Shown: piece by piece, positions 3,701 through 54,165 of the stretch | How positions within the stretch are numbered: the stretch's first letter is position 1 | Layout: every line of letters begins with the position of its first letter | Source of the DNA: Ruditapes philippinarum | Taxonomy: Eukaryota | Assembly (NCBI RefSeq): GCF_026571515.1 | Contig: NW_026857787.1 | Location: 62,001 to 126,000, forward strand | Direction of reading: 5' to 3' | Length of the DNA stretch: 64,000 bases | Translations under genes and position numbers: made by a program | Notes under the pieces: model-generated | Told to the model about the DNA's origin: nothing | Database searches by the model: none | The model's input: only the letters and a program-made list of their open reading frames with translations

Positions 3701-6700
3701 TACAGTAACGTTTCAAATACATGTGCTACAATTTACTTTCTTTTATAGTCTATAAAGTTTAAATGTTTTAAATACATTTTTGTCCATCCATTCTTTTTTG
3801 CTGACTGCGAATGCTTGTTTGGGACCAATTTATAAATCATAATTATAAATTGCATGTAGAATAAAGTTCATGTAAATTGTCCAGGCACGTGTTTTGCTAA
3901 TATTAAGATATATATCTAAAATTTAATAGATTTTTTTCATTTCGATGTGTCATGTATAAACATGTATTATCTTTAAATACTTCAGGTATGTATACTTGCA
4001 TTTATATAACGAGGAACTGTAAATGTTCATGATAGACGAGGGAATGTTCTGTTCTGTTTTGTAAAAAAGTTATCTGTTGAATGTTTCAGATTGTGGACCT
4101 TTGGAAGATTTGGAAGATTTATCGAATGCTGGCCTTAGATTACTATTTTCTGAAACGAATTACAGATCGCAAGCCGCTATCACATGCGATGAAGGATATT
4201 ATGATTTAAATAAACACGATCAACCAGAAGGCATTTCAACGACAATGATAACTTGTTCTGTAAATGGAACCTGGACTGGTTTACCAATCTGCACCAAGAA
4301 AGGTGAACTTGTTTTATTCTCAATATCTTCTTTCCTGCCGTCCATCTTCCAAAATATCTATTAGACCAAATTTTAGCAAAGCCATGGATTTGAAACACAA
4401 CTGTTATGAAGGAGAGCAATGCCTATTCAATACGCATTATAATACTGCACGTTTGTAACGTCATTTTTCATTGGATAATAGTGACGTTTATATAGTTTTA
4501 TATACACGGCTGCTGTCGATTCATGAAGAAATCTTACGTTTTTTTCTATAAAAATGATGCTTGCTGTATTATAAATTCGTTATAAAGATTGTTGACAGGT
4601 TATATGGCCGTATATAAACGGCTGTTTGCAATATAACCCTCGCCTAACGGCTCGGGTTATATTTACAAACAGCCGTTTATATAGGGCCATATAACCTGTC
4701 AACGATCTTTATAACTAATAGTATATATTCATATAACGTCAAAGGTGCATTGGACCCATTAAGTGCTGAAATCAATTACATAGCATTTATTAAGTGTCAT
4801 TGGACGATTTTTAAGTATAGCAGTAGAATTTTACATTCATTATTTTTTCTCTCGATTCTGATACATATTAAATAAGAACACCGATATNNNNNNNNNNNNN
4901 NNNNNNNNNNNNNNNNNNNNNNNNNNNNNNNNNNNNNNNNNNNNNNNNNNNNNNNNNNNNNNNNNNNNNNNNNNNNNNNNNNNNNNNNNNNNNNNNNNNN
5001 NNNNNNNNNNNNNNNNGTTATTACTGTCTTCGTAAATACTTTATTCACTCCAAATACAATAGGATTTAACTCAATACAGGATTGGAGCAGTACCTCAAGA
5101 CGCTTGCAGAAATCATGATCACAAAATAGACAAATGTGATTTTTTTCGCAGAATTTCACATTTTTCATTCCTTATCGTATATAAATCGGTGTGAAAAGAT
5201 GAGTTAGACGTTTTAAAGTTCATTCCGTAAGGTAAAAAGGCGAGATTTTACCATATAATCATTCAAGTGTCTTGTCCGGTATGTACCCGGAATACTGTAT
5301 TTAATGTGATGCTCCAATCCTTTTTTCAGTCTCACTCAATACAATAATACTGTATGATCTCTTACAAATGTGATTCTTACAATTGTTCCATCAAAACAAT
5401 ATTTATATTATAAACAAGTGAGCATTGGAGGTATAAGTCGCTCGGGTCGCTCTGATTCCAACAAACACTAAGGACACCAGACGGGTCACGTTTGTTAATT
5501 ATATCGGAGTATACTTTAATGAAACAGTTAAACGAAATCACATGTATCCCGCAATATGTAAACCGAAAAATGTTTAACCTCGTTAACGAAGATATGTACA
5601 GACCACGGTAAACTACATAATGATTTAATATTATATATAACTAGCTTCTTTATGACAAAAATTGGCACCGTACAAATAAACAAGATGACAGAAGAGATTA
5701 CAACGCTTGGGGAATCGGGTATAATTCCGTCAGATATGATAAACATTTCATATGGTTAGATTAAGCCTTATACGGGACAAGGTAAAAATCTTAGCACTAA
5801 GAGCAAAATGAATAATGGATAAACTTTTACTCTGTGCCAATGGGTGACTATCAGCTGTCAAACGCGATAAGTTATCTGAAAGTATCGATAGCCATAATGA
5901 TAGCCTCCAAGTACCACTTAGTATTGAAAATAATCCAGGCCACCAACTTTATCACTGCATTGGTTTTAACATGAACACCATTGTTTCACCCTGGGATAGC
6001 AACGCAATACGCATACGCACATATTGTTTAGCCAAGTATTGGGTGGGGGGAAATATCTCTCAACAATAGCTCAAATCTTAAACAAAATATCTTCCACAAT
6101 GGCAGTGTCATCAAGTATGAATAAAATCTACATACATTTCGCCATTTACATTTATGACAGTAGACACTGCATAGGGTGATATAAACCTTGTAAGGTACAT
6201 GAGTCAATAACGCAACATGTCCTCATTCCACACCTATTCAACTCTGTTACGAATGAGAAAACATTTACAGACTACTATGATGAGGCATTTTTAGATTAAT
6301 GATTCAACTTCATTGATAAGCACATCTAATTTGATCTTAAAATAAATATTTGCAACAAATGGTAGTTTGTGGCGCGTATATCCTTCCAATGCTTGATTTT
6401 TGTTGTAAGGTTTGGGGAAGGGCAGTTACATAAATAAAGTGGACATTCAAAAAAAGAGAACTGCCAACATAATCAGTCGCTCATAAGGATAGGGTACTTA
6501 AAACTATACCCCATACTAATAATTTAAAGCATTCGTCATCTTATGTCAGCATTACTGTGTTTTGAAACAAATAAAGTATTACTATCTTATAATGTTTGAC
6601 ATCACTATCTTTCAAAAAAAGCTTTAAAATTCATTTTTACATTACAATTAGATAAACAATGAATTTACCACTTTATATTGATATTATCATTAATTGTAAT

Positions 6701-9700
6701 GGTTTATCTGTAATTACTTTGATTAATACGAATGTAAATCTGATAAATGAATTAAAATATCTTACATTTACCTATAATAGAATATATTTGATTGTTTTTA
6801 AGAAAGAATAATTTCAAATTTTGTATAGATCTGTATTTTTCTTTTGTAATAACAGTTACTCTTTTATTATTATTGTAAAATAAGAAGACCGTACTAAAAT
6901 ATATACATGTATATGTATGCATGCTCTATCTTTAGATTGTGGTGACGTTAACAAAGAACATATAGATCATGCAGCAAGCATAAATCAGGATAATGGTACC
7001 ACGTTCAAATCAACTGCAAACGTACATTGTGATGAAGGCTATTATATCAAGGGTCAAACTCAATTGATGGAGATATCAACAAGAACAATAACATGCTCTA
7101 AAACGGGAAAGTGGACAGACATGCCGATCTGCATTCCTAAAGGTATCAGTGCAATATTGTAGATCTTTCTTACCACAATTATGCTAGTTGAATCCCTTTC
7201 TGATGTGTCAAAAGTGTCACAATGGATTCCAACCAATCATTAGCAATATAATTCTAACAAAATAATGTTGGAATATTTGATTTCACAAGAACAAAAAGTG
7301 ATTTATGTATAAGACAATTAAAATGTCTATCAGTTTTATAGTACTGTAATAGTAAAATGTAAAACACGGTATTATATATATGTACAACAACAACAACAAT
7401 AACAACAGCAACAACAGGTATTTAGTACTGTAAATACAAAAATGTATAAAAAAAAGGTTTAGTAATTTAATGTAATACAAATAAAACATATTGCTCACTA
7501 GAATTTGTCTCATTTGATTGTCATAATTTTATTCGCCTATTCATTGAATGTGCTGTTTCATATTTCAGATTGTGGAAGTTTACAAAACATAACTATGATG
7601 AACGCAGGTTCCAGAATGCCCATAAATGGAACCAACTATACAGCGATCGCCAATGTTAGCTGTGATGTGGGATTTAAAGATAAAGATGAAACACAGGTGC
7701 CGGGAGTTACAGGCAAGATTATCAGATGTAATGAAAGTGGAGTGTGGGACAATTTACCAAAATGTGTCCGAAAAGGTAAACATATATTTAATATCATGAA
7801 AAAGAAATACGCGAGATATGTGTTAATATTGGTACCCAACAGTCATGTTAATATAGTGAAGGTAACATTATTTTTGTGTAAGATAATTAAAAATAGCTCA
7901 TTTAATAGTTAATGTAAAACGAAACTTATTTAGTTAGAATTGAAATAATTATGTGATAGTTTACATAAAACGATTAAAAGAACTATCTTAATCAGGGTAA
8001 GTATATGAAGTTCCGCTAAGGGGAGTTAATTTGAGAGCAAAACTGGATAAACAAAGCAAATGAGTCTTACTTTAATATCGAGTTATCAATGACTTTGATT
8101 GCTTAAAATTATATCTATTGCTTTCAAGAGATTTGCTTGCGATCATTGAACCAATTTGATAAGATAAACGCACATATGAGTTTATAAAGATACCCTACTT
8201 GTATGTATTTAAGGATATGATACATGTACTTAGTATGCTATAATCAGTCACCAATTTTATGTAGACATTTTACACATTGTCATATGATGGACCGACAACA
8301 GCAGATAATACAACAACAACAACAACAAATACAAAAATTCAATAAATCAAGTTTATTACTCGTATTTACAAAAGAATTGAAATATCTACAAATGGAGAAA
8401 TGAAATGAAAATAAAATTCATTTCATAGACTAAAGCCTGTCATTTACTTTAAGGGAAAGTCGTACACTTTGAAATAAATCCTATACCTTGCACTTACAGT
8501 AACACGTTGTAGTGATACCAAAGTATACTGATACCCATAAAGATACCTATCACAAATTACGTATTGTTCTTGCAACCTCCATGCTGGCTTCTATGTTAAA
8601 TGTTAGCTTTTCTGATCTGACATCAGAAAGATCCAAAAATCACGAAATCAATACGAAAAGTAGGTGTTCGCTTTGAACAGACAGCACGAAAAATCCTTTA
8701 ACTTCATTTGCTGTCTGTAATCGTCAAAAGCGTAGCTCCCACCCTCTTTTGTATACGAGTCGTTATACCTGACACTATCTTCCGGTAATGAAATGTTCCT
8801 AGCCGTCTTTGCCGTATCGTGTCGGGATGGTACACTAGGATCGCTGGTTATCGACATACATGTATAGTCGTCCTTGCTGTATCGTGTCAGGATCGTACAC
8901 TTGGATTGCTGGTTATCGTCATGTTGCCGTCCTTGCTGTATTGTGTCGAGATAGTAGACTAGGATCGCTGGTTATCGTCAAGTAGCCGTCCTTGCTGTAT
9001 AGTATCAGGTTCGTACACTATGATCGCCGGTTATTGTCAAGTAACCGCCCTTGCTGTATCGTGTCGGGATAGTACACTAGGATCGCTGGTTATCGTCAAG
9101 AAGCCGTCCTAGCTGTATCGTGACAGGACCGTACACTAGGATCGCTGGTTATCGTCGAGTAGCCTTCCTTGCTTATCGTATCGGGATCGTACACTAGGAT
9201 CGCTGGTTATCGTCAAATAGCCGTCCTCCCTGTATCGTGTCGGGATAGTACACTAGGATCGCTGGTTATCGTCAAGAAGCCGTCCTAGCTGTATCGTGAC
9301 AGGATCGTACACTTGGATTGCTGGTTATCGTCAAGAAGCCGTCCTTGTTGTATCGTGTCGGGATAGTACACTATGATCGCCAGTTATTGTCAAGTAACCG
9401 CCCTTGCTGTATCGTGTCGGGATAATAAACTAGGATCGCCGGTTATCGTCAAGTAGCCGTCCTTGCTATATCGTTTCGTGATAGAACACTAGGATCGCTG
9501 GTTTTCATCAAGTAGCCGTCCTTGCTGTATTGTGTCGGGATAGTACACAAGGATCGCCGGTTATCGTCAAGAAGCCGTCCTTGCTGTATCGTGTCGGGAT
9601 AATACACTAGGATCGCTGGTTATCGTCAAGTAGCGTCCTTGCTGTATCGTGTCGGGATAGTACACTAGGATTGCCGGTCATCGTCAAGAAGCCGTCCTTG

Positions 9701-44419: not shown

Positions 44420-45141
44420 CTAAACATTGTCTGGAGGACAGAGACTAACAACAAGAAGCTCGAGTTTGTTTTTCGACAGCATCAGTACACCAGCATGTCC
44501 TCGTTCTATTTCACATGCAGCTACATTATCATATAAAACAGGGTTGCCATTGAACTTGACCAGTGGCCACCGTCCAATTATACGGGCCAAACACGTCTGA
44601 AAAGTGAAGGGCACCATCGTTTCATTTTCAAACTCGTAGCACAAAGAAACAGTTGACAAGGGTTTTCCTTCCAAAAATAACCTCATATTGTCATCATCGG
44701 CTGAAATCTTGAGTAAACTTGGTACAATGAAAAACCCTAATCGCTCAACAGTCATCCCAGAATTATGATTATAAGCTAGGACCTCCGCTATAATATGATG
44801 TTTTTGCATGTACCCTATCAGCAATTGTTTGAATTCATAAAAATCGTTATCTTTTTCTTGTCTCCAAACCTCTTCAAAAAGGTCTGCGCGTAAAATTGCT
44901 GTCGTACACAATTCCTTCCATAAGCTTCTCATTTTCGGACGCACTTTGCAAAATTTTTCAGATGTTATAACGCACCTGAAAGCATCAACAAGAAACTGTG
45001 GATCTAAGACAACATGGTCTGACAAATTATCCTCATCAAAATAACAGAATGTTCCCTTTGAATGATGATATGAAAGAAACAGTTTGATCTGGTCCATTGT
45101 TTCTCTTGAGTTGTCAGTTTGTAATGGACTGTCCGTTTGAC
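44420..45141 (-). CDS. Roco gene: COR domain segment
   Basis: FLSYHHSKGTFCYF...VVLDPQFLVDAFRCVIT...FIVPSLL; TAG at 44422-44420. Confidence 0.88.
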
Positions 45142-45314
45142 ATGTAGTTCTCCGCGTTACATCGTATAGACGGAGAACTGTTGTCTCAACAGGTGCGATA
45201 TCAAAACTGGTATAACCAGTTTGGTCACGTGATAAGAGTTATTGACCGTGCGTACGTACGATTAGTGGTCAGTTCTACAGAGACTCTCGCTTGGTACACG
45301 TCGTTAACTACATT
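45142..45314 (+). repeat. Split direct repeat A1 (173 bp)
   Basis: Identical by eye to 50501-50673. Confidence 0.95.
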
Positions 45315-45328
45315 GGGAAGTTTTTATC

Positions 45329-45623
45329 ATGGATCGAGATACTCACGACATTATCAAGGACGTTTGTAAAGGACACCGTGGAGAAAGCAGGCAGTCTTTA
45401 CTTCAAGAAATTGGGACGATGTTCGAAAAGATAAGTGAACAAAATAATTCTTCTCAATTTGCTAGAATAAGCAATTTAGTGGCATCATCTCAGCCAAAAT
45501 TTAAAAGGAAAAGCAACGAAGAACAGTTTTGTCATAATAGTAAATTTATGTTGAAGCTTAATGAAGCCGAGTCTAAGTTAGATAGCAGTAAAATTGAGGA
45601 GGCCAAAAGCAGTATTACAACAG
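45329..45623 (+). CDS. DIRS gag-like exon 1
   Basis: MDRDTH...KFKRKSNEEQF...AKSSITT; donor ACAG|gtttgt. Confidence 0.75.
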
Positions 45624-46560
45624 GTTTGTGTTTAAAAAACAAAACAAAAACTTAATGAATTCTACTCTATTCCATTTATAAGAAGCATTTTCAATTTGCA
45701 AAAGCTTGGTTTTTATTCAGCAGTTTTAAATTCGGGATACAATTAATAAATTCGCTATTTTCTAATAGTTTTTACGTGTTTAATGTGTAGACCACGTGGT
45801 CTCGATACACGTGTCTTTTGTTATACTAGAGGTGAATTGTTCTGTATGAAGATTGTTGGGATATGTTTATTGCTAAAGGAATAGTAATGCTAATAATAAG
45901 AATGATAATAAATATAAAAATTATATGTCTATTATATTTAAAAAAAAAAAAAAATCTTTGTTTCTTCTGTTTTCAAATTTATTTAGATTAATGTCTTTTT
46001 GGACATAAGTACATAAAAAAAAAAAAAAAAAAAAAAGATAAAGATTTTATAAGCTGATGTGATCAATATAGATGTTTTTTGCATGGTTAGCAATGACTAA
46101 TGTGGACTCGCCTTTTCTTTAACATGTATAAATAGGGGATTCATGTTTTATAGTATTACTGATATAGTTACATTATAAACTTGCATACGCATGTCACAGA
46201 TTTAAAACCCGTTGCGTTGGTAATGCGCAGGCCGATATGAATAAGTTAGAGTAGTATCATTTATAAATAAATTAAGTGATACTATAAATGGCGGTAGCAC
46301 GGGTTTTGCATGTTTACTGATTGAGATATTTTTAAAGTATAGCAAACACAGGAAAACTACGAATGACGGTAATATATTAGTATTTGTTAGATACGGCTTC
46401 TTTTATTTTCAAAGTTTGTAAGAAAATTATGTATTATATCAATGTGATTTTCAGTTACAAGGATTATATCACAGGAGTTGATTATATTGACTCATAAAGA
46501 TTATATTATTTATAGAAATTATGTTAAATATTTTTAGTAATAGGCAAATTTTTCTTTCAG

Positions 46561-47970
46561 CCTTGGATATTTTGTCACACCGACAAAAGATGATACAGTT
46601 GGCGGATGCTAGTGAATTGGGGTGGAGAGTAGTTCATGAGTATGAACAAAATCCTCTAGCAGACGACAGCGATGATGAAAAGAAAATGTATAAAGCTGAA
46701 GTCAGGGCTGACAGGAAGTTCAAAGCTGAGAAAAATAAGAAGTCTAAAAAGTTTAGAACCAAGCCTTACACCAGGAGTGTACCTGCACGAGCTACAAGTC
46801 AATCCACTTCGCAGCAATTTGGTGTACAGAAACCAGGCTTATGTTTTTACTGTGGAAAGCCGGGTCACTGGAGAAAAGAATGTCCAGCAAATACTACAAA
46901 TTTGAATAATAAGATGAGTACATTTTGTTTATTTAATAAACATTGCGATATGCTAGACAGTGATTCATTGAATCACAATTACAGGGAACAAATAAATAAT
47001 GAGGCAATTAGTTGCGATTCGAACCAAAATGATTCAGAAAATGAAATCGTTGTATTTCCTAAAAAATGTTTAAATCTTAATGTTTCTTCTGTGAATCACG
47101 GATATTGTTCTCAGCTGAACAGTGAATGCTCAGTATCAGTAGCAGAGCATTTTGGGTCTAAAAAAGAAAAACTTAAATGTGTAATATCGCCAGTAGGAAG
47201 ATTGAAGGCTCATGCTAGCAAATGGCGATCTATCAATGGCGATTCTTTCATTGTAGACGTTATAGAAAATGGTTACAAATTGCCATTTAGAAATATTCCT
47301 AGTAAAGTAATGCTTAAAAATAATAAGTCCGCTAGAGACAATCCGTCTTTTGTTACGACGGAAATAGAGTGTTTACTAGAAAAACATGTTATTTCGGTAG
47401 TAGATCACGTGCCTGAAGTTGTAAATCCGTTGACTGTGGCTTATAATAAGGCCGGAAAAGCAAGGTTGGTTTTAGATTGTAGGCATGTAAATCAGTTTTT
47501 GCATCTATTCAAAATCAAGTTTGAAGATGTTCGTGTCGCTCAGTCTCTATTTAGTGCTGGGGTTTTTGCTTTTACTTTTGATTTGAAAGGAGCTTATCAT
47601 CACATCGATATTTTTCAAGCTCATAGGAAATATTTAGGTTTTTCATGGATCTATAATGGTCAACAGACTTATTTTGTGTTTAATTCACTTCCATTTGGAA
47701 TAGCTAGCGCAGGGCATATTTTTTCTAAAACTGTCCGAGTATTGGTCATGTACTTAAGGTCATTAGGTCATAAGGTGATAATGTATCTTGACGATGGCAT
47801 CGGTGGTCATATTAATTTCCGAGAAGCATTAGAAAGTAGTGCATTTGTAAAAAGTACATTGATTAAATATTATATAATAGTTTTTTTGTTTGCGGAAGAA
47901 AAGTGTCATTGGTTTTCCTGTCAAAAAGTCACATGGTTAGGTTGTAATTTTTTTTTCATAATAAGTTTTT
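46561..47970 (+). CDS. DIRS gag exon 2 (CCHC knuckle) continuing in frame into reverse transcriptase
   Basis: RQKMIQLADASELGW...DDSDDEKK; CFYCGKPGHWRKEC; FDLKGAYHHIDI, LPFG, YLDD. Frameshift in the T-runs near 47950-47970. Confidence 0.92.
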
Positions 47971-48847
47971 TGTCACAGAAGAACGAATGTCTGTCACAGA
48001 CAACTCAATTGGGTCTGAATTACATCAGATAAGTTGTGACAAGTGTAGTGTTCTACCAGTCCGTGTGTTAGCGTCTTTGGTTGGACGTCTGATTTCTCTT
48101 CAATTTGTCTTTGGTAACATAGTGAGATTGAGAACGAGAGAGATGTATAAATGTATCATCTCTAGGGCTAGTTGGGACTCGCCAGTTTTAGTGAGCGAAT
48201 CAGCCATACATGAAATTATGTACTGGAAAGAAAATGTAAGAAAATTGAATGGATCAGGTAAATACATGTCTGAAATGAAAGTGTACGATATACACGTATT
48301 TTGCGATGCCAGTGGATCTGGTTATGGTGGTTACCTATATTTTCCGAGCAATGAAGCTCAATTACATTCTAATATTCAAATGAGTGGAACATTGCTATCC
48401 CCGGAAGTGGATTGCATGTCGAATGTTATGTTGAAATCACCGATTTCTTCAGCTGTTTCCCCGGAAGTGGAAAAATGTATGCTAGATAATACAAAGAAAA
48501 GTATAGATATAGATACGAAAGTCACTGGAAGTTGGCTTTTTGAAGAACAGATTAAAAGTTCTTCTTGGCGTGAGGTTGAGGCAGTGAATAGGGTTGTTAG
48601 AAGTCAAGCACAATTTCTCAAAAACAAAAATGTGAAAGTTTTTTCTGATAATCAAAATGTAAAATCGATTCTTTTGAACGGCAGTGTTAACGCAGAGCTT
48701 CAAAAAATTGCTTTAGGTTTCAATGATTTTTGTGAAGAAAATAATATCCATATTAGCCCGGAATGGATACCTAGAGACAATAATCAGATATCAGATTATT
48801 TGAGTAGATGTCTTGTTTGTGATGATTGGTCAATATCAGATCGTTGA
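47971..48847 (+). CDS. DIRS RT connection and RNase H
   Basis: FCDASGSGYGG...SSSWREVEAV...FSDNQNV...WIPRDNNQISDYLSR. Confidence 0.9.
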
Positions 48848-49260
48848 TTCAGATATTTTGATTGTATTTGGGTAATACACACAATAGATAGGTTTTCTAC
48901 TCATTATAACACTCATTGTGAAAGGTTTAACTCTTAGTGGTGGGTACCAGGAACGGAAGCTATAAATGCTTTGGATCAGTCCTGGAAAATGATAATAATT
49001 GGTTAGTTCCCCACTCGGCTAATAGTAGAGTGTATAAACAAAATTGTAAAGGAAAATGAAAGTTGCACATTAATTATACCAAAGTGGAAATCTTCAGCTT
49101 TTTTTTGGCCTTGCTTGTTTGATACAAAACGTAATTTTAAAACTTACATAAGAAATGCAGAGGTTTTTACAAAAAATGGAATAATACGTACTGCGAAAGG
49201 TAATAACGGCGTGTTTGCACACACACAATTGCGTTTTGTATGCTGGCACTTAAGATCAGG
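48820..49260 (+). pseudogene. Degenerate DIRS adenine-methyltransferase-like domain
   Basis: DDWSI...HTIDRFSTHYN..C.RFNS*WW.PG.EA.NA..Q.W / NNWLVP / TLIIPKWKS..FWP, with two stops and frameshifts. Confidence 0.75.
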
Positions 49261-49317
49261 TTTTAGTTTGGAGTGCCAATATAGAGACATGTACTGTATT
49301 CTATTTTACAGTATTTT

Positions 49318-50361
49318 ATGAAGTTTATGATATTTGTCATTTCGATTATAGGTGTTGACTTAAAACCTTCAATCAGGAGCATGATGAACAACGCAGGAGT
49401 GGACATTCAAAAACATCAAACTGTTATTGATCACATGGCAGGTTATATTGTACAATCCCGGGCAGTTTCTACTAGACAGAAATATATGAACTATTTCAAA
49501 CATTTCGAAAAATATTGTGTCAAAAATGGTTTTGTTTCCAAGCCAGCTTCATCTATAGTTGTAGCAATGTATTTAACAAACATGTTAGATCACGGAAAGT
49601 CGTACGGTGTTATTTCTTCTACCGTATATTCTATTAAATGGATGCATTCTTTGCATGATTATGTGGATCCTACTACGAATTCAATGGTTAAACATTTATT
49701 GGAAACAAGTAAACGAGAATGCTATGAACCTGTTAAAAAGAAAGATACAATAGATTCGGAAATGTTACAAACATTATGTGATAATTTTTCAGATTCCAGC
49801 GACGTGGTAACCTTAAGAGATCTGTCAATTATTCTTTTAGGTTTCGCTGGGTTTTTACGTTTCAACGAACTGAATTCTTTAATTTGTTCAGATATAACAT
49901 TCAATGATGATCACTTAGTGATAAACATTCGTAAGAGCAAAACTGATGTGTATAGGCAAGGAAAATCTGTTCCGATTTGTAAGGGTACTACTAATGCATG
50001 TCCTTTTAATATGCTTAAAAAATATATGAGGGCAGCTTGTCTTGACGTAACCTGTAATGAATTTTTGTTTAGGCCATGTTTTAGGTCAAAGGGGGTATCG
50101 GCGCTTATAAAAAGTAATAAAAAGTTGTCTTACACACGAGTTAGGGAATGCATTTTGTCTAAATTAAAGTTAGTAGCACCAAATTTAAATTTAGGTACAC
50201 ATTCTCTGAGAGCTAGTGGAGTTACGGTGGCCGCTAACTCAGGTGTGTCTGATAGATGTTTAAAGAGACATGGCCGTTGGAAAACTGATATAGCTAAGGA
50301 CGGTTATATTGTTGATTCATTAGGCAGTCGATTGTCAATTACAAAAAAGTTAAAGTTATAA
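49318..50361 (+). CDS. Tyrosine recombinase (intact ORF)
   Basis: Catalytic set GFLRFNE (R), KSKTD (K), HSLR (H..R), HGRW and DGY (Y). Confidence 0.95.
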   Translation: MKFMIFVISIIGVDLKPSIRSMMNNAGVDIQKHQTVIDHMAGYIVQSRAVSTRQKYMNYFKHFEKYCVKNGFVSKPASSIVVAMYLTNMLDHGKSYGVISSTVYSIKWMHSLHDYVDPTTNSMVKHLLETSKRECYEPVKKKDTIDSEMLQTLCDNFSDSSDVVTLRDLSIILLGFAGFLRFNELNSLICSDITFNDDHLVINIRKSKTDVYRQGKSVPICKGTTNACPFNMLKKYMRAACLDVTCNEFLFRPCFRSKGVSALIKSNKKLSYTRVRECILSKLKLVAPNLNLGTHSLRASGVTVAANSGVSDRCLKRHGRWKTDIAKDGYIVDSLGSRLSITKKLKL

Positions 50362-50442
50362 GTATTTTATAGATACTTTTTTATAAACATATGAATAATT
50401 AATTGAATTTTAATGTTTTTCGTCTCAAGCTTTGTAATTTCT

Positions 50443-50673
50443 ATACGTGTCTCGCCTTGCAGTTGTTGTTGTTGTTGTTTTGGATAGTGCCTGTTGAGAC
50501 ATGTAGTTCTCCGCGTTACATCGTATAGACGGAGAACTGTTGTCTCAACAGGTGCGATATCAAAACTGGTATAACCAGTTTGGTCACGTGATAAGAGTTA
50601 TTGACCGTGCGTACGTACGATTAGTGGTCAGTTCTACAGAGACTCTCGCTTGGTACACGTCGTTAACTACATT
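50443..50673 (+). repeat. Internal B1+A2 junction of the split direct repeats
   Basis: B1 50443-50500 abuts A2 50501-50673 directly. Confidence 0.95.
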
Positions 50674-51137
50674 AAAATTCAATAACATTTGTGCAAAATG
50701 ATGTTTATATATGCTTTTATTTGTTTAATTAAGAGGCATGTCTGAACTGTTTCCGTTGTTCAGTATTTCTAGGAATAGTCGGGGCATTTCAATGTTAACG
50801 CATTGACTAGGCTACGGAAACACGTTTCCTCCTGTTTTTAAAAAATAATGAAAAGAAAAGATAGGGGGTTTTTCGTGGGCGGCCCGTATTCTGATGAAGA
50901 AATATACGTTTGAATTTTCGATTTCCGTCATGATTGAAAACATTCTGGCTTTGCTTTAGAGGTTTTATCAGATTATTAACATGACGCAAATCGCATTTTC
51001 GATTGTAGCATGCTTATATTTATCTAATAGAATACACATGATTAATGAGTGATTAATTCTTGAGTTATAGAATTATATTGTAATAGAAAAGTATTATTGT
51101 AATAACGAATGTTTACTCCTCAGTTGTGTACCAATAA

Positions 51138-51195
51138 ATACGTGTCTCGCCTTGCAGTTGTTGTTGTTGTTGTTTTGGATAGTGCCTGTTGAGAC
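51138..51195 (+). repeat. Split direct repeat B2 (58 bp), preceded by AATAAA
   Basis: Identical to B1, including (gtt)6; aataaa at 51133-51138. Confidence 0.95.
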
Positions 51196-52365
51196 TGTCT
51201 ATTTCTATAAGTTCATCAAGTTTTATAATTCTTTTGTGTTTGTTCATTTTAAGTGCTTTCTCAAGTAGAATCCATTTAGCCGGAATTCTTGTTTTCATTT
51301 GTATTTTTCCTAAACGTGTTATATACGACCGTAAAGCATCAATTTCGCTTTCTGACTCACTTGTATTTGAAATAGCAAATTGATCAGGTTGAATATGATT
51401 AAGACATACACTGTCGTCAAATATTTGCCTGACCTCCTCAAAATAGTCCTCGACCTTACTGTCCATATTTAGTTTGTCCGTGTGGGTTCCTACTAAAATA
51501 ATAGCCGGTTCCATTCCATCCCTACTGCCAACAAATGAATTTACAGAAGCCACCCAGAATTTTAAATAGTCCCTCATTCTCTTTTGATGTAATGGGAACT
51601 CCTTATCTTCAATTATTGTGTCCAGGGATATGCTTAAATTAAACACTAGCACATAAACAGCATGTTTTGAATGAAATATTTGATGGGTAGCATAATAGAC
51701 AAACTGTCCTCCGAAGTCCCATATATTTAGCGTAACATTGTTGTCAAGGTTTATTGCCGCCTCAATGGATTCAACTCGTTTTAATTCAGTCTGAAATGAA
51801 TTTAAATTTTCGTAATTGACTGTTTTATTTCTAACATAAATATCAACAGCGCCAGCAATTTTAGTTTTGTTTTCTTTAACGTTTTCTCTTCTTTTGCCAT
51901 TGTACTCATCAGATATATCAATTATTTCGAGACCACGTGCTGAACAAATTTTGTTTTTATCTCTTGTTCTTGATATATCCGTAACTGAAGTGGGTGCTTC
52001 TTCATCTTTGTTAAGCAGTCCTTTTTCCCCATGAGTAACCGATGCAAATGTCTCGTACGTTCTTTCTCTTAGTGCAATATTGACCAAGCGCTGAACAGTT
52101 TCTTCGTCAAGATCTTCATTGTCTAACTTCTTCCATTCATTTTCGCTGATAACTGTGCATTTATGCAAGTCAATACCGTTGGTTGTTTCAACTCCTTCAA
52201 CTGACTTTTTCAATAAACGCCTTACTAATGACGTTTTGCCTTGCTCGCAACAACCAATAACCATAACTCGTATTGTGTTATCATTTTCTGTCCCTTTCTC
52301 TAATGCTTTTTCATAGAGTTCTCTTGTTTTTGGATCATTTGAAAGCTCATCTGGTACTGTATTTT
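51196..52365 (-). CDS. Roco gene: Roc GTPase domain and start of COR
   Basis: Acceptor ttttatag|AAAATACA; G1 GCCEQGKTS, G2 TNGID, G3 WDFGGQ, G4 VGTHTD, G5 ISN; then IPAKWILLE. Confidence 0.93.
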
Positions 52366-52694: not shown

Positions 52695-54165
52695 ACAAAA
52701 GGGCCATGAGTCCTGAGTCGTTCACCAGAAACAACTGCTTTTCAGTAGAAGATAAAAGACGCCCCTAATAATGCTACAGACAAAGTTTGGTGATCATCCA
52801 TCAATCATTTCAGTTGGAGATGATGTTCAAATGTTTTTCTAATTACAGCTTTAGCGGCCCATAAATGGGGCAAATCAAATTGATACGAGCAAATGTGATA
52901 AAAGACTACCTAAGAATACTACAGACAAAATTTTGTGATCAACCATAAACTATTTCAGTAGGAGATGATGTTCAAAGGTGTTTCTACGTTTAGCTGTATC
53001 GGCCCCTAAAAGGGGCAAATCAAATTAATATGAGCAAACTTGTGAAAAGACAACCTGCGACTGCTACAAACAAAGTTAAATGATCATCCGTCATTTATTT
53101 CAAAAGGAGTTGATGTTCAAAGGTTTTTCTATTTTTAACTTAAGCAACCCCTAAAAGGGCCAATCAAATTAATATTAGCAAACTTGATAAAAGACTACCT
53201 AAGAATGCTACTGACAAAATTTGGTGATCATCCATCGATTAGTTTTGTAGAAGGAGACGTTTAAAAGTATTTCTGATTTTAGCTTAAGCAGTCCCTAGAA
53301 GAGGCCAATCAAATTAATATGAGCAAACTTGATAAAAGACTACCTCGGAATGCTACAGACATAATTTGGTGATAATCCATCAATAATTCAGTAGGAGATG
53401 ATGTTCAAATATGTCTAATTTAAGCTTTAGCGGCCCCTAAAAGGGGCCAACCAAATTAATATGAGCAAACCTGATAAAATACTACCTAAGAATGCTACAG
53501 ACAAAATTGGTGATCATCCATCAATTAGTTCTGTGGAAGGAGACCTTCAAAGGTATTTCTTATTCTAGCTTTATCGGCACCTGAAAGGGGCCAATCAAAT
53601 TAATATGAGCAAACTTCATAAGGCATTACTTAAGAATGCTACAGACAAAATTTGGTGATCATGCATCAATAATTCTTTAGGAGATGATGTTCAAATGTTT
53701 TTCTTTTTTAGCTTTAGCGGAACCAAAAAGTAGCCAACCAAATTAATATGAGCAAACTTGATTAAATACTACCTAAGAATGCTACAGACAGAGTTTGGTG
53801 ATCATCCATCACTTACTGAAGTTCTGCACAAGGAGATTTCTAAAGGCGTTTCTTTTTTTAAGTCTAGAAACCCCTAAGAATGCTACAAACAAATGTTGGT
53901 GATCATCCATAATTTAATTTAGTAGTAGAAGATGTTTTAAGGTTTTTCTATCTTTAGCTCTGTTGACTCTTAAAAGGGTCCAATTGAAATGACATGAGCA
54001 AATTTAAGTGTGACTGTCACAAGGATGCTACAGACCAAATTTGAGGTAAATCTGCCCATTATTTGCAGAATAGAAGATGATTGTTTACACATGACGACGG
54101 ACCCCGAGTACCCCCTTTGATACTAATAGCTCAACCTGAATCTGCATCTCTGATTAGCTATAAAT
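52695..54165 (-). mobile_element. Helentron/HINE-like element with about nine 144-bp tandem subunits (Roco intron)
   Basis: Unit atgctacagacaaa.tttggtgatcatccatc...aaattaatatgagcaaact; termini acaaaagggccatg and atagctcaacctg...agcta. Confidence 0.75.

What the first reader, a model, noticed from the sequence alone, without database searches (positions are those of the whole stretch)
50490..50552. Stem-loop that forms only at the B-A junction and contains the crossover triplet
Seen in sequence: cctgttgagaca (50490-50501, end of B plus GAC plus the first base of A) is the reverse complement of tgtctcaacagg (50541-50552, inside A). Nested inside, agttctccg (50505-50513) pairs with cggagaact (50530-50538). 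The outer stem needs B joined to A, so it cannot form at either integrated end. Established: integron attC sites and the CTX phage attP are folded single-strand substrates for tyrosine recombinases. Inference: this retroelement may recombine a folded single-stranded junction, or use the hairpin for strand transfer or circularisation, which would also make integration directional.
Basis: partly seen in the sequence, partly recalled or inferred. Interest (0 to 1): 0.8.

Follow-up and report, generated by a model that had tools for sequence, protein, structure and literature searches.

The report
Conserved hairpin at retrotransposon circle junction
The stem-loop is real: it is the core of a roughly 90-base hairpin across the internal B-A repeat junction of a clam Ngaro-type retrotransposon, it is kept by compensatory mutations in at least 15 related families, and it gives a testable clue to how these poorly understood elements join their ends and integrate.

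Summary
The host element is a 6,054-bp Ngaro-type tyrosine-recombinase (YR) retrotransposon, A1-ORFs-B1A2-X-B2, inserted without duplication in a Roc-COR exon of a bivalve genome.

The 63-nt hairpin extends to three tiers (50477-50566). The same architecture occurs in 13 families of this genome (YR 46-59% identical) and in two families from metagenome contigs. Covariation is strong: 82.5% of cells are paired against 64.6% in shuffles, and 20 of 24 pairs change on both sides. Even the conserved AGAC/GTCT core covaries (GGAC/GTCC, GTAC/GTAC).

The B|A boundary always falls where the outer helix opens into an asymmetric internal loop. The two hairpin halves are the segments predicted to be missing from the transcript ends.

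The "GAC crossover triplet" is not general. One of 13 independent insertions has GAC before A1, although targets show a bias (A at -2 in 13/13).

A structured junction is well supported. Its use as a folded substrate for the YR is plausible but unproven. The helices lack G·U pairs, which favours a DNA-level role. Rivals are a reverse-transcription role and a duplex-only site.

The parts
45139..45141 (+). Host-derived GAC immediately 5' of A1. It happens to equal the last 3 nt of B.
   Evidence: other copies of the family have GAT, TAC, AAA, GAA, CAT, TAT or TTA at this position.
45142..45314 (+). A1, the left split direct repeat. It carries a copy of the inner hairpin (45146-45179) and of the outer 3' arm (45182-45193), but has no B arm upstream.
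   Evidence: In the CM search, A1 copies score 44-50 bits against 60-80 bits for junction copies.
45269..45274 (+). Initiator-like TCAGTT, the predicted transcription start. It lies 44 nt before the end of A and is repeated in A2 at 50628-50633.
   Evidence: one TCA(G/C/T)T..CTA motif lies 37-54 nt before the end of A in 11 of 11 families, and a TATA box lies 28-30 nt upstream in 5 of them. This is inference from motifs.
45329..45655 (+). First gag-like ORF (exon 1). RNA contigs join 45620 to 46558, a GT..AG skip of 937 nt.
46521..48032 (+). ORF with a CCHC zinc knuckle and reverse transcriptase.
   Evidence: PF00098, PF00078.
47987..48847 (+). ORF with weak RNase H-like hits.
   Evidence: PF17917 at 22.6 bits, below the 24.8-bit cut-off.
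49318..50361 (+). Tyrosine recombinase ORF of 347 aa. The C-terminal HSLR...GRW...GY motifs are readable.
   Evidence: (PF00589, 30.6 bits against a 27.1 cut-off).
50443..50500 (+). B1, the internal copy of the right split repeat. Its last ~24 nt (50477-50500) form the 5' strand of the junction hairpin.
50477..50566 (+). The whole three-tier junction hairpin. Third tier: 50477-50486 with 50558-50566. Outer helix: 50487-50501 with 50541-50555. Internal loop: 50502-50504 opposite 50539-50540. Inner helix: 50505-50514 with 50528-50538, with A50529 bulged. Conserved loop: 50515-50527.
50497..50500 (+). AGAC, the conserved last 4 nt of B. The element's 3' end and 5' end are joined immediately after it (50500|50501).
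   Evidence: AC is invariant in 15 families, and the AG positions covary with the partner GTCT.
50541..50545 (+). TGTCT in A. The T is invariant and GTCT is the partner of AGAC.
50501..50673 (+). A2, the internal copy of the left repeat.
50674..51137 (+). X, the unique segment between A2 and B2.
   Evidence: RNA contigs cover it.
51133..51138 (+). AATAAA polyadenylation signal created at the X|B2 boundary. There is none before B1.
   Evidence: the same arrangement is seen in 10 of 12 families.
51138..51195 (+). B2, the right end of the element. It ends ...TTGAGAC in every copy examined.
44420..45138 (-). Downstream (COR) part of the host Roc-COR exon that the element interrupts.
   Evidence: PF16095. 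In-silico removal of 45142-51195 gives one 637-aa open frame across the joint.
51196..52264 (-). Upstream (Roc GTPase) part of the interrupted host exon.

Best explanation
The stem-loop is the core of a conserved, roughly 90-nt, three-tier hairpin/palindrome. It is built from the tail of repeat B (5' strand) and the head of repeat A (3' strand plus a nested inner hairpin). It exists as a contiguous unit only where B is joined to A, that is at the internal B1-A2 junction and at the junction of a circularised copy.

I read it as the element's att-like recombination site, selected at the DNA level. The conserved AGAC at the end of B pairs with GTCT in A to form the outer helix. The helix opens into an asymmetric internal loop (about 5-6 nt opposite 3-4 nt) exactly at the point where the element's ends are joined and exchanged with the target. 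The inner helix and its conserved 13-nt loop follow. This helix-bubble-helix layout mimics a YR core site in the way folded attC and CTX attP(+) sites do. The most likely use is presentation of the junction to the element's YR in a folded (hairpin or cruciform) form.

Shown here: the structure, its conservation and covariation, the position of the boundary, and the target bias.

Inferred: that the YR binds it, that it acts folded, and that it acts as DNA.
For: Stems and energy are.

The same architecture is found in 13 families of this genome with YR only 46-59% identical and in two families from metagenome contigs. One of those has no match in this genome and the other matches it at no more than 83%.

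On a MAFFT alignment that was not fitted to the structure:
- 82.5% of cells are paired against 64.6% in shuffles (0 of 500 reach the observed value).
- The covariation score is 0.509, against 0.171 shuffled and 0.08-0.13 for slid controls.
- 20 of 24 pairs change on both sides.
- RNAalifold predicts the same two helices on its own.

Arms pair better within a family than across families in all three tiers, with permutation p of 1e-4 or lower for two tiers and 2.5e-4 for the third.

The core covaries: AGAC/GTCT becomes GGAC/GTCC in L059 and GTAC/GTAC in L051.

The 3' arms would make a second, inverted 'site' with a spacer of only 3-4 bp. That is too short for a duplex YR core, so their conservation is best explained by pairing.

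The helices are almost purely Watson-Crick. There are 0 G·T and 0 A·C among 150 inner-helix cells, and 12 G·T against 6 A·C in the outer helix. This is unlike helices constrained only as RNA.

Insertions are precise and lack duplications. Element and target share no spacer homology to the right of the crossover. Left flanks show family-specific motifs that share an A at -2 with the B end, in 13/13, 14/15 and 14/20 insertions.

Published work shows that DIRS-1 uses single-stranded cDNA intermediates and needs its internal junction copy (PMC7192593).
Against: - There is no biochemical evidence that the YR binds or cleaves this structure, in either form.
- The crossover is off-centre, about 28 nt from the dyad. 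This is unlike duplex core sites and unlike the centred ITR-ITR junction of DIRS1-like elements.
- The DIRS-1 single-stranded cDNA is antisense, and nothing is known for Ngaro elements.
- The strongly conserved loop lies in the promoter-bearing repeat A, so it could be conserved for transcription instead.
- More distant families (YR 36-39%) place a different hairpin entirely inside B, so 'needs B joined to A' is specific to this clade.
- Covariation of inverted repeats can also arise when a dimeric protein and its two duplex half-sites co-evolve.
Confidence: 0.45

Rival explanations
1. The hairpin works in replication and not in integration. It would be a structure of the genomic RNA or of the nascent cDNA that guides reverse transcription. 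Possible roles are pausing or template switching while the missing termini are copied from the internal B1-A2 unit, holding the B tail next to the A head for circle closure, fold-back priming of the second strand, or packaging and RT recognition.
For: The two hairpin halves coincide with the segments predicted to be absent from the transcript ends. AATAAA is created at the X|B2 boundary in 10 of 12 families and is absent before B1. An initiator-like TCAGTTCTA lies 37-54 nt before the end of A in 11 of 11 families, with TATA 28-30 nt upstream in 5. The internal copy is therefore the only template for exactly this region.

The junction is present in RNA-seq contigs of a mollusc, together with a spliced form of the element.

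The sense strand folds more stably in 12 of 13 families.

DIRS-1 needs its internal junction copy to restore its ends, and its priming is unknown (PMC7192593).
Against: The conserved helices show no G·U enrichment (0 of 150 inner cells). This is atypical for a structure constrained only as RNA.

The sense-strand advantage comes mainly from the GT-rich flanks and is only 1.4 kcal/mol with DNA parameters.

The exact coincidence of the element boundary with the helix/loop border, and the AGAC-like bias of targets, are not explained by an RT role alone.

Transcript ends are inferred from motifs. Only contigs were available, not raw reads.
Confidence: 0.3
2. The hairpin never forms. The region would be a duplex recombination site made of inverted protein-binding repeats for the YR or accessory factors. 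The apparent covariation would reflect co-evolution of each family's recombinase with symmetric half-sites, as in loxP, rox or vox.
For: - The AGAC-type B end is echoed in target left flanks.
- In 10 of 15 families the inner 5' arm starts GTTC or GTAC 5-6 nt after AGAC, which loosely resembles an inverted half-site at core-site spacing.
- A few right flanks carry GTTCT at the same offset.
- Strict Watson-Crick symmetry is expected for duplex inverted repeats.
Against: - Three nested tiers of complementarity over about 90 nt are far more than any YR core needs.
- The crossover lies outside both inverted-repeat centres.
- The inverted copy of the putative core has a 3-4 bp spacer.
- Stem sequences differ almost completely between families while the loop is conserved. 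This is the opposite of what is expected if the arms were the recognition elements and the centre a spacer.
- Some of the flanks that look like A are old A copies.
Confidence: 0.17
3. The hairpin is an incidental or host-directed structure: a chance palindrome, a pre-miRNA-like hairpin derived from a transposon, or an element that blocks polyadenylation at B1.
For: Rfam gives weak pre-miRNA-like matches (mir-2941 at 23.7 bits, mir-255 at 23.6 bits). The B tail is GT-rich like a downstream polyadenylation element, and it is sequestered only at B1.
Against: Both Rfam scores are far below the gathering thresholds of 60 and 50 bits. Covariation across 15 families excludes chance. B1 lacks an AATAAA anyway, so occlusion is not needed.
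Confidence: 0.05

Closest known systems
Ngaro-type tyrosine-recombinase retrotransposons (DIRS order), with split direct repeats A1-[ORFs]-B1A2B2
   Same: - Repeat layout and ORF order (gag, RT/RH, YR).
- No methyltransferase domain detected.
- Insertion without target-site duplication.
- An internal B1-A2 copy of the joined ends (layout as described in PMC8547959 and PMC13465315).
   Different: The open papers I could read describe the split repeats only as direct repeats. None mentions complementarity between the B tail and the A head, or a junction hairpin. The original Ngaro papers were not available to me.
DIRS1-like elements: inverted terminal repeats, internal complementary regions and a 3-bp circle junction
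   Same: - An internal copy of the joined termini.
- A short junction motif echoed in the target.
- No duplication on insertion.
- Because the termini are inverted repeats, the DIRS1 circle junction is also a palindrome. Self-complementarity is central to the DIRS-1 model (PMC3266345, PMC7192593).
   Different: - Here the terminal repeats are direct, not inverted.
- The internal copy is identical to the termini and not complementary to them.
- The palindrome is offset, with the crossover about 28 nt from the dyad.
- Identity between the junction triplet and the target is only a bias, with exact GAC in 1 of 13 insertions.
Integron attC sites (folded bottom strand recombined by IntI)
   Same: - An imperfect palindrome in which pairing is conserved more than stem sequence.
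- Two helices separated by an unpaired central spacer.
- A crossover at the edge of the outer helix.
- Precise junctions without spacer homology to the partner site.
   Different: - This is a eukaryotic retroelement whose YR is not an IntI.
- The terminal loop is conserved in sequence, whereas in attC it is variable.
- No conserved extrahelical bases were seen. The bulged A50529 is specific to this family.
- Single-strand usage is untested.
CTX phage attP(+), a folded single-stranded site for XerCD
   Same: Two inverted segments of a single strand fold to mimic a duplex core site with a mismatched central region.
   Different: The recombinase there is a host enzyme, the genome is DNA, and the arms are about 90 nt apart. 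No homology was found.
Duplex YR core sites (loxP, FRT, dif)
   Same: Inverted repeats lie near the crossover, and the recombinase belongs to the same superfamily (PF00589).
   Different: The crossover is not between the inverted repeats. The repeats are nested and span about 90 nt. No spacer identity with targets is seen.

Membership tests
Ngaro-type YR retrotransposon (DIRS order) | Split direct repeats arranged A1-[ORFs]-B1A2-B2 | tested here: met
   A is at 45139-45314 and 50498-50673, B at 50443-50500 and 51138-51195, each pair 100% identical. The same layout is found in 14 related loci.
Ngaro-type YR retrotransposon (DIRS order) | Encodes gag-like, RT/RNase H and tyrosine recombinase proteins in that order | tested here: met
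   zf-CCHC plus RVT_1 (46521-48032), a weak RNase H match (47987-48847) and Phage_integrase (49318-50361).
Ngaro-type YR retrotransposon (DIRS order) | No methyltransferase domain (distinguishes Ngaro from DIRS1-like and PAT-like elements) | tested here: inconclusive
   There is no Pfam hit other than RT/RH, and only about 470 nt lie between the RH ORF and the YR ORF. The DIRS methyltransferase-like domain has no dedicated model in the scan I ran.
Ngaro-type YR retrotransposon (DIRS order) | Integration without target-site duplication | tested here: met
   Flanks of 13 copies show no duplication. Removing 45142-51195 restores a 637-aa host reading frame.
DIRS1-like elements | Inverted terminal repeats plus internal complementary regions | tested here: not met
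   One search finds no inverted repeats of 30 nt or more in 40000-64000. The termini are direct repeats. Only a sub-terminal complementarity of about 25 nt exists (B2 end against A1 45182-45207).
attC-like folded recombination site | Imperfect palindrome with helix, unpaired central spacer and helix; pairing conserved by covariation | tested here: met
   The internal loop is about 5-6 nt opposite 3-4 nt in all 15 families.
attC-like folded recombination site | Conserved extrahelical bases that mark the recombined strand, and a variable terminal loop | tested here: not met
   The bulged A50529 occurs only in this family, and L036 has a bulged C. The terminal loop GTTAC..GTATA is the most conserved part.
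attC-like folded recombination site | Recombined as single-stranded DNA by its recombinase | not testable with these tools
   This needs binding and cleavage assays with the YR on folded and on duplex oligonucleotides.
Duplex YR core site (loxP/FRT type) | Two inverted recombinase-binding elements flanking a 6-8 bp spacer that contains the crossover | tested here: inconclusive
   AGAC is followed after 5-6 nt by GTTC or GTAC in 10 of 15 families. The two arms are only loosely inverted copies of each other, and 5 families lack this.
Rfam pre-miRNA families mir-2941 and mir-255 | Score at or above the family gathering threshold | tested here: not met
   23.7 bits against 60, and 23.6 bits against 50.

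The most novel reading that the evidence does not exclude
Ngaro-type retrotransposons use a folded single-stranded junction hairpin as the actual substrate of their tyrosine recombinase. This would be a eukaryotic counterpart of integron attC and CTX attP(+) recombination.

A related variant is that the fold-back of the cDNA end primes second-strand synthesis and is then resolved by the YR at AGAC|, in a rolling-hairpin-like way.

Either version would explain the precise, homology-independent and duplication-free insertions. It would also link them to the single-stranded cDNA intermediates reported for DIRS-1.
Probability: 0.25. Interest if true: 0.85.

Novelty: new variant of a known kind. 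Interest (0 to 1): 0.62.

Why it matters
How DIRS-order retrotransposons restore their ends, circularise and integrate is still largely a model. Only DIRS-1 has been tested experimentally, and nothing comparable exists for elements with split direct repeats.

This work gives a structure that is conserved and covarying, and that places the joining and crossover point at a helix/bubble border. That supplies defined oligonucleotide substrates and defined compensatory mutants, so the question of a folded versus a duplex substrate becomes directly testable. If the folded form is used, single-strand recombination by tyrosine recombinases would extend from bacteria (integrons, CTX phage) to animal retroelements.

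The family also looks recently active. It has copies identical across the 231-nt B-A repeat query at different loci, it has interrupted a host exon, and it is transcribed and spliced. Experimental material should therefore be obtainable.

Tried and rejected
1. Strand of folding. Minimum-energy folds suggested a sense-strand (RNA) bias: the plus strand is more stable in 12 of 13 families, with 52 G·U against 10. When I restricted the count to the conserved helices the bias vanished (inner 0 and 0; outer 12 G·T against 6 A·C, p 0.24). I do not use it as evidence for RNA.
2. The 'crossover triplet' as an obligatory 3-bp identity, as in DIRS1-like elements. Rejected, because only 1 of 13 insertions has GAC before A1.
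3. Spacer homology between element and target, which classical two-strand YR exchange requires. The right flanks show none.
4. Known RNA families and tRNA-like primers. Rfam gave only sub-threshold miRNA-like hits and ARAGORN found no tRNA.
5. Cross-species context through the look-up of encoding contigs for the Mercenaria, Dreissena, Mytilus and Pinctada homologues.
I continued with short stretches.
7. The first pattern for the metagenome scan had too few specified bases. I corrected it and ran it.
8. The original Ngaro papers (Goodwin & Poulter 2004; Poulter & Butler 2015) are not held. Prior description of such a hairpin cannot be fully excluded.
9. Only contigs, not raw reads, were available for the RNA runs. 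Transcript starts and ends could not be measured.

Full report
**The observation.** The 83-nt stretch 50480-50562 folds at -22.4 kcal/mol as DNA (z -8.1) and at -45 kcal/mol as RNA (z -8.6). None of 200 dinucleotide shuffles folds as well. The repeat search confirms A (45139-45314 and 50498-50673) and B (50443-50500 and 51138-51195), each pair 100% identical. The 5' arm of the outer stem is therefore the end of B, and the 3' arm lies inside A.

**The element.** Between A1 and B1 lie four ORFs: a gag-like ORF, a CCHC knuckle plus RT, a weak RNase H match, and a 347-aa tyrosine recombinase (YR). This is the Ngaro layout A1-[ORFs]-B1A2B2 described in PMC8547959. The element sits inside a Roc-COR exon on the minus strand. 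Removing 45142-51195 in silico gives one open frame of 637 aa across the joint, so the ends are right and there is no target duplication.

The genome is 1.4 Gb. The closest YR proteins come from bivalves (Mercenaria, Ruditapes, Dreissena, Mytilus, Pinctada). A Ruditapes philippinarum protein is recorded on a contig of 34,663 bp, the same length as contig C10636 of this assembly, which suggests the species. That is inference.

RNA-seq contigs labelled 'mollusc metagenome' hold the element, including the B1-A2 junction. They show a GT..AG joint from 45620 to 46558, so the family is transcribed and spliced. A copy on another contig, with different flanks, is 100% identical across the 231-nt B-A repeat query. 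The family is therefore young.

**The 'crossover triplet'.** In every copy of the family examined, B2 ends ...TTGAGAC and A1 begins ATGTAG. The three bases before A1 are GAC only in this copy. Elsewhere they are GAT, TAC, AAA, GAA, CAT, TAT or TTA. The 3-nt overlap of A and B in the window is thus supplied by the target.

There is nevertheless a clear target bias. For this family the left flank reads A(-5) A(-4) G/T(-3) A(-2, 13 of 13) and never G at -1. Two metagenome families prefer RTAA| and AAA|. The A at -2 and -4 is shared with the B end AGAC. Right flanks have no consensus and no identity to the first bases of A. A few right flanks turn out to be old, diverged A copies, which indicates insertion next to resident elements.

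**Comparative test.** The YR finds well over a hundred relatives in the same genome, many with open frames at 34-59% identity. I fetched 20 full loci and mapped A1/A2 and B1/B2 in 14 of them. Eleven of these 14 (ten distinct families, YR 46-59% identical) show the same layout:
- B ends in AGAC.
- About 5 unpaired, AT-rich bases follow.
- Next comes an inner helix of 9-10 bp closing a conserved 13-nt loop (GTTAC/GTTTC...GTATA).
- 3-4 unpaired bases follow, ending in an invariant T.
- Then comes GTCT and an extension complementary to the end of B.

Examples of the outer helix are CCTGTTGAGAC/GTCTCAACAGG (window), CATGTTAAGAC/GTCTTAACATG (L040) and GCGTTAAGAC/GTCTTAACGC (metagenome family M2). 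Even the core covaries, as GGAC/GTCC in L059 and GTAC/GTAC in L051. A third tier pairs the GT-rich part of B with a CAAAAC-type segment of A. In the window this is 50477-50486 with 50558-50566.

**Covariation statistics.** I used a plain MAFFT alignment of 15 families, not fitted to the structure.

| Measure | Observed | Control |
|---|---|---|
| Cells forming a standard pair | 82.5% | 64.6% after shuffling partners (0 of 500 reach it) |
| Covariation score | 0.509 | 0.171 shuffled; 0.08-0.13 slid |
| Pairs with changes on both sides | 20 of 24 | - |
| Inner helix cells paired | 94% | - |
| Outer helix cells paired | 74% | - |

RNAalifold recovers the same two helices unaided. Pairing each family's 5' arm with other families' 3' arms is clearly worse than pairing it with its own, for all three tiers (permutation p of 1e-4 or lower, 1e-4 or lower, and 2.5e-4).

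A covariance model built from the alignment finds at least 123 sites in the genome. Junction copies score 60-80 bits. A1 copies, which lack the B arm, score 44-50 bits.

Two further families come from metagenome contigs. One has no match in this genome and the other matches it at no more than 83%. The feature is therefore not confined to this assembly.

**What the hairpin is made of.** In 10 of 12 families an AATAAA is created exactly at the X|B2 boundary (window 51133-51138) and is absent before B1. The GT-rich tail of B follows it like a downstream polyadenylation element. In 11 of 11 families a single initiator-like TCAGTTCTA lies 37-54 nt before the end of A (window 45269-45274), and in five families a TATA box lies 28-30 nt upstream.

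If these motifs are used, the genomic RNA lacks the tail of B2 and the first ~130 nt of A1, the stretch that holds the hairpin's 3' half. Those are the two strands of the hairpin, and the internal B1-A2 copy is then their only template. This is inference from motifs. The RNA runs were available only as contigs, which cannot show transcript ends.

**RNA or DNA?** Whole-region folds favour the sense strand (12 of 13 families). Inside the conserved helices there is no wobble signature. There are 0 G·T and 0 A·C among 150 inner-helix cells, and 12 against 6 in the outer helix. Helices that covary this much yet avoid G·U are unusual for a purely RNA constraint. They fit selection on DNA complementarity better.

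A duplex-only reading has three problems:
- The inverted copy of the putative core has a 3-4 bp spacer.
- The crossover lies outside both repeat centres.
- The stems vary while the loop is conserved.

**Mechanism.** I therefore favour a DNA-level, att-like junction site that acts in a folded form. The YR would cleave after AGAC where the outer helix meets the internal loop (confidence 0.45). Supporting logic is that precise junctions without spacer homology are what single-strand exchange followed by replication produces in integrons. DIRS-1 is known to use single-stranded cDNA and to need its internal junction copy (PMC7192593).

The main rival is a role in reverse transcription, circle closure or fold-back priming (0.3). 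The two are not mutually exclusive. A duplex-only site (0.17) and incidental or host-directed roles (0.05) are less likely. The Rfam pre-miRNA-like hits are far below threshold.

**Limits.**
- There is no biochemistry.
- The comparative set is bivalve-centred.
- The founding Ngaro papers are not in the library, so novelty is judged from the open literature searched.
- More distant families in this genome (YR 36-39%) carry a different hairpin wholly inside B that ends at the junction. A junction-adjacent hairpin may therefore be general, while the B-plus-A construction is specific to this clade.

Noticed in passing
window 45620-46558: RNA-seq contigs of two runs join 45620 to 46558 (937 nt skipped, GT..AG). 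Other contigs run through the intron. The retrotransposon's gag region is therefore spliced in part of its transcripts, yet genomic copies keep the intron.
   Followed up: partly
window 44420-45138 and 51196-52264 (minus strand): The element interrupts an exon of a Roc-COR (Roco) gene. Precise in-silico excision restores a 637-aa open frame, so this is a recent, gene-disrupting insertion.
   Followed up: partly
G000 contigs C15451 (80821-81528), C10412 (L015), C4555 (L018), C8968 (L030); C3942/C7303 (L008, L029, L025): Reduced forms of the same family exist. 'A-X-B' lacks the ORFs and B1, and 'A-ORFs-B' lacks A2-X. Both are expected either from recombination between the direct repeats or from YR-mediated resolution at B-A junctions.
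   Followed up: no
L048 about 6618-6660, L049 about 6785-6819, L050 about 6686-6727: More distant Ngaro-like families (YR 36-39% identical) have a different hairpin lying entirely in B, and its 3' arm ends at the B|A boundary. L048 and L049 share a conserved loop (TTGAG.G.AACGAATTA), and the stems of L048 and L050 covary.
   Followed up: partly
window 45195-45235 (A1) and 50554-50594 (A2): Just 3' of the hairpin, A carries a small palindrome (ctggtataaccag; AAACCGGTTT in other families) and an E-box-like palindrome TCACGTGA. These are probably promoter elements.
   Followed up: no
L033 A1 left flank (about 1858-1874 in the oriented locus): The host flank of one insertion (TAAGGTATGACCATAC) resembles that family's own B end (TAAGGTAGAGATGAGAC) over 17 nt. 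Several right flanks are old A copies. Insertions seem to favour sites resembling, or lying beside, resident elements, as reported for DIRS-1.
   Followed up: partly
window 52723-54063: There is a tandem array with a period of about 145 bp (6-7 copies at 60-80% identity) downstream of the Roc exon. It is unrelated to the element.
   Followed up: no
proteins P0028, P0046, P0113: Close YR homologues are deposited as 'Candidatus Thiodiazotropha' MAG proteins. Given the bivalve distribution of the family, they are probably host (clam) retrotransposon contigs binned into symbiont genomes.
   Followed up: no
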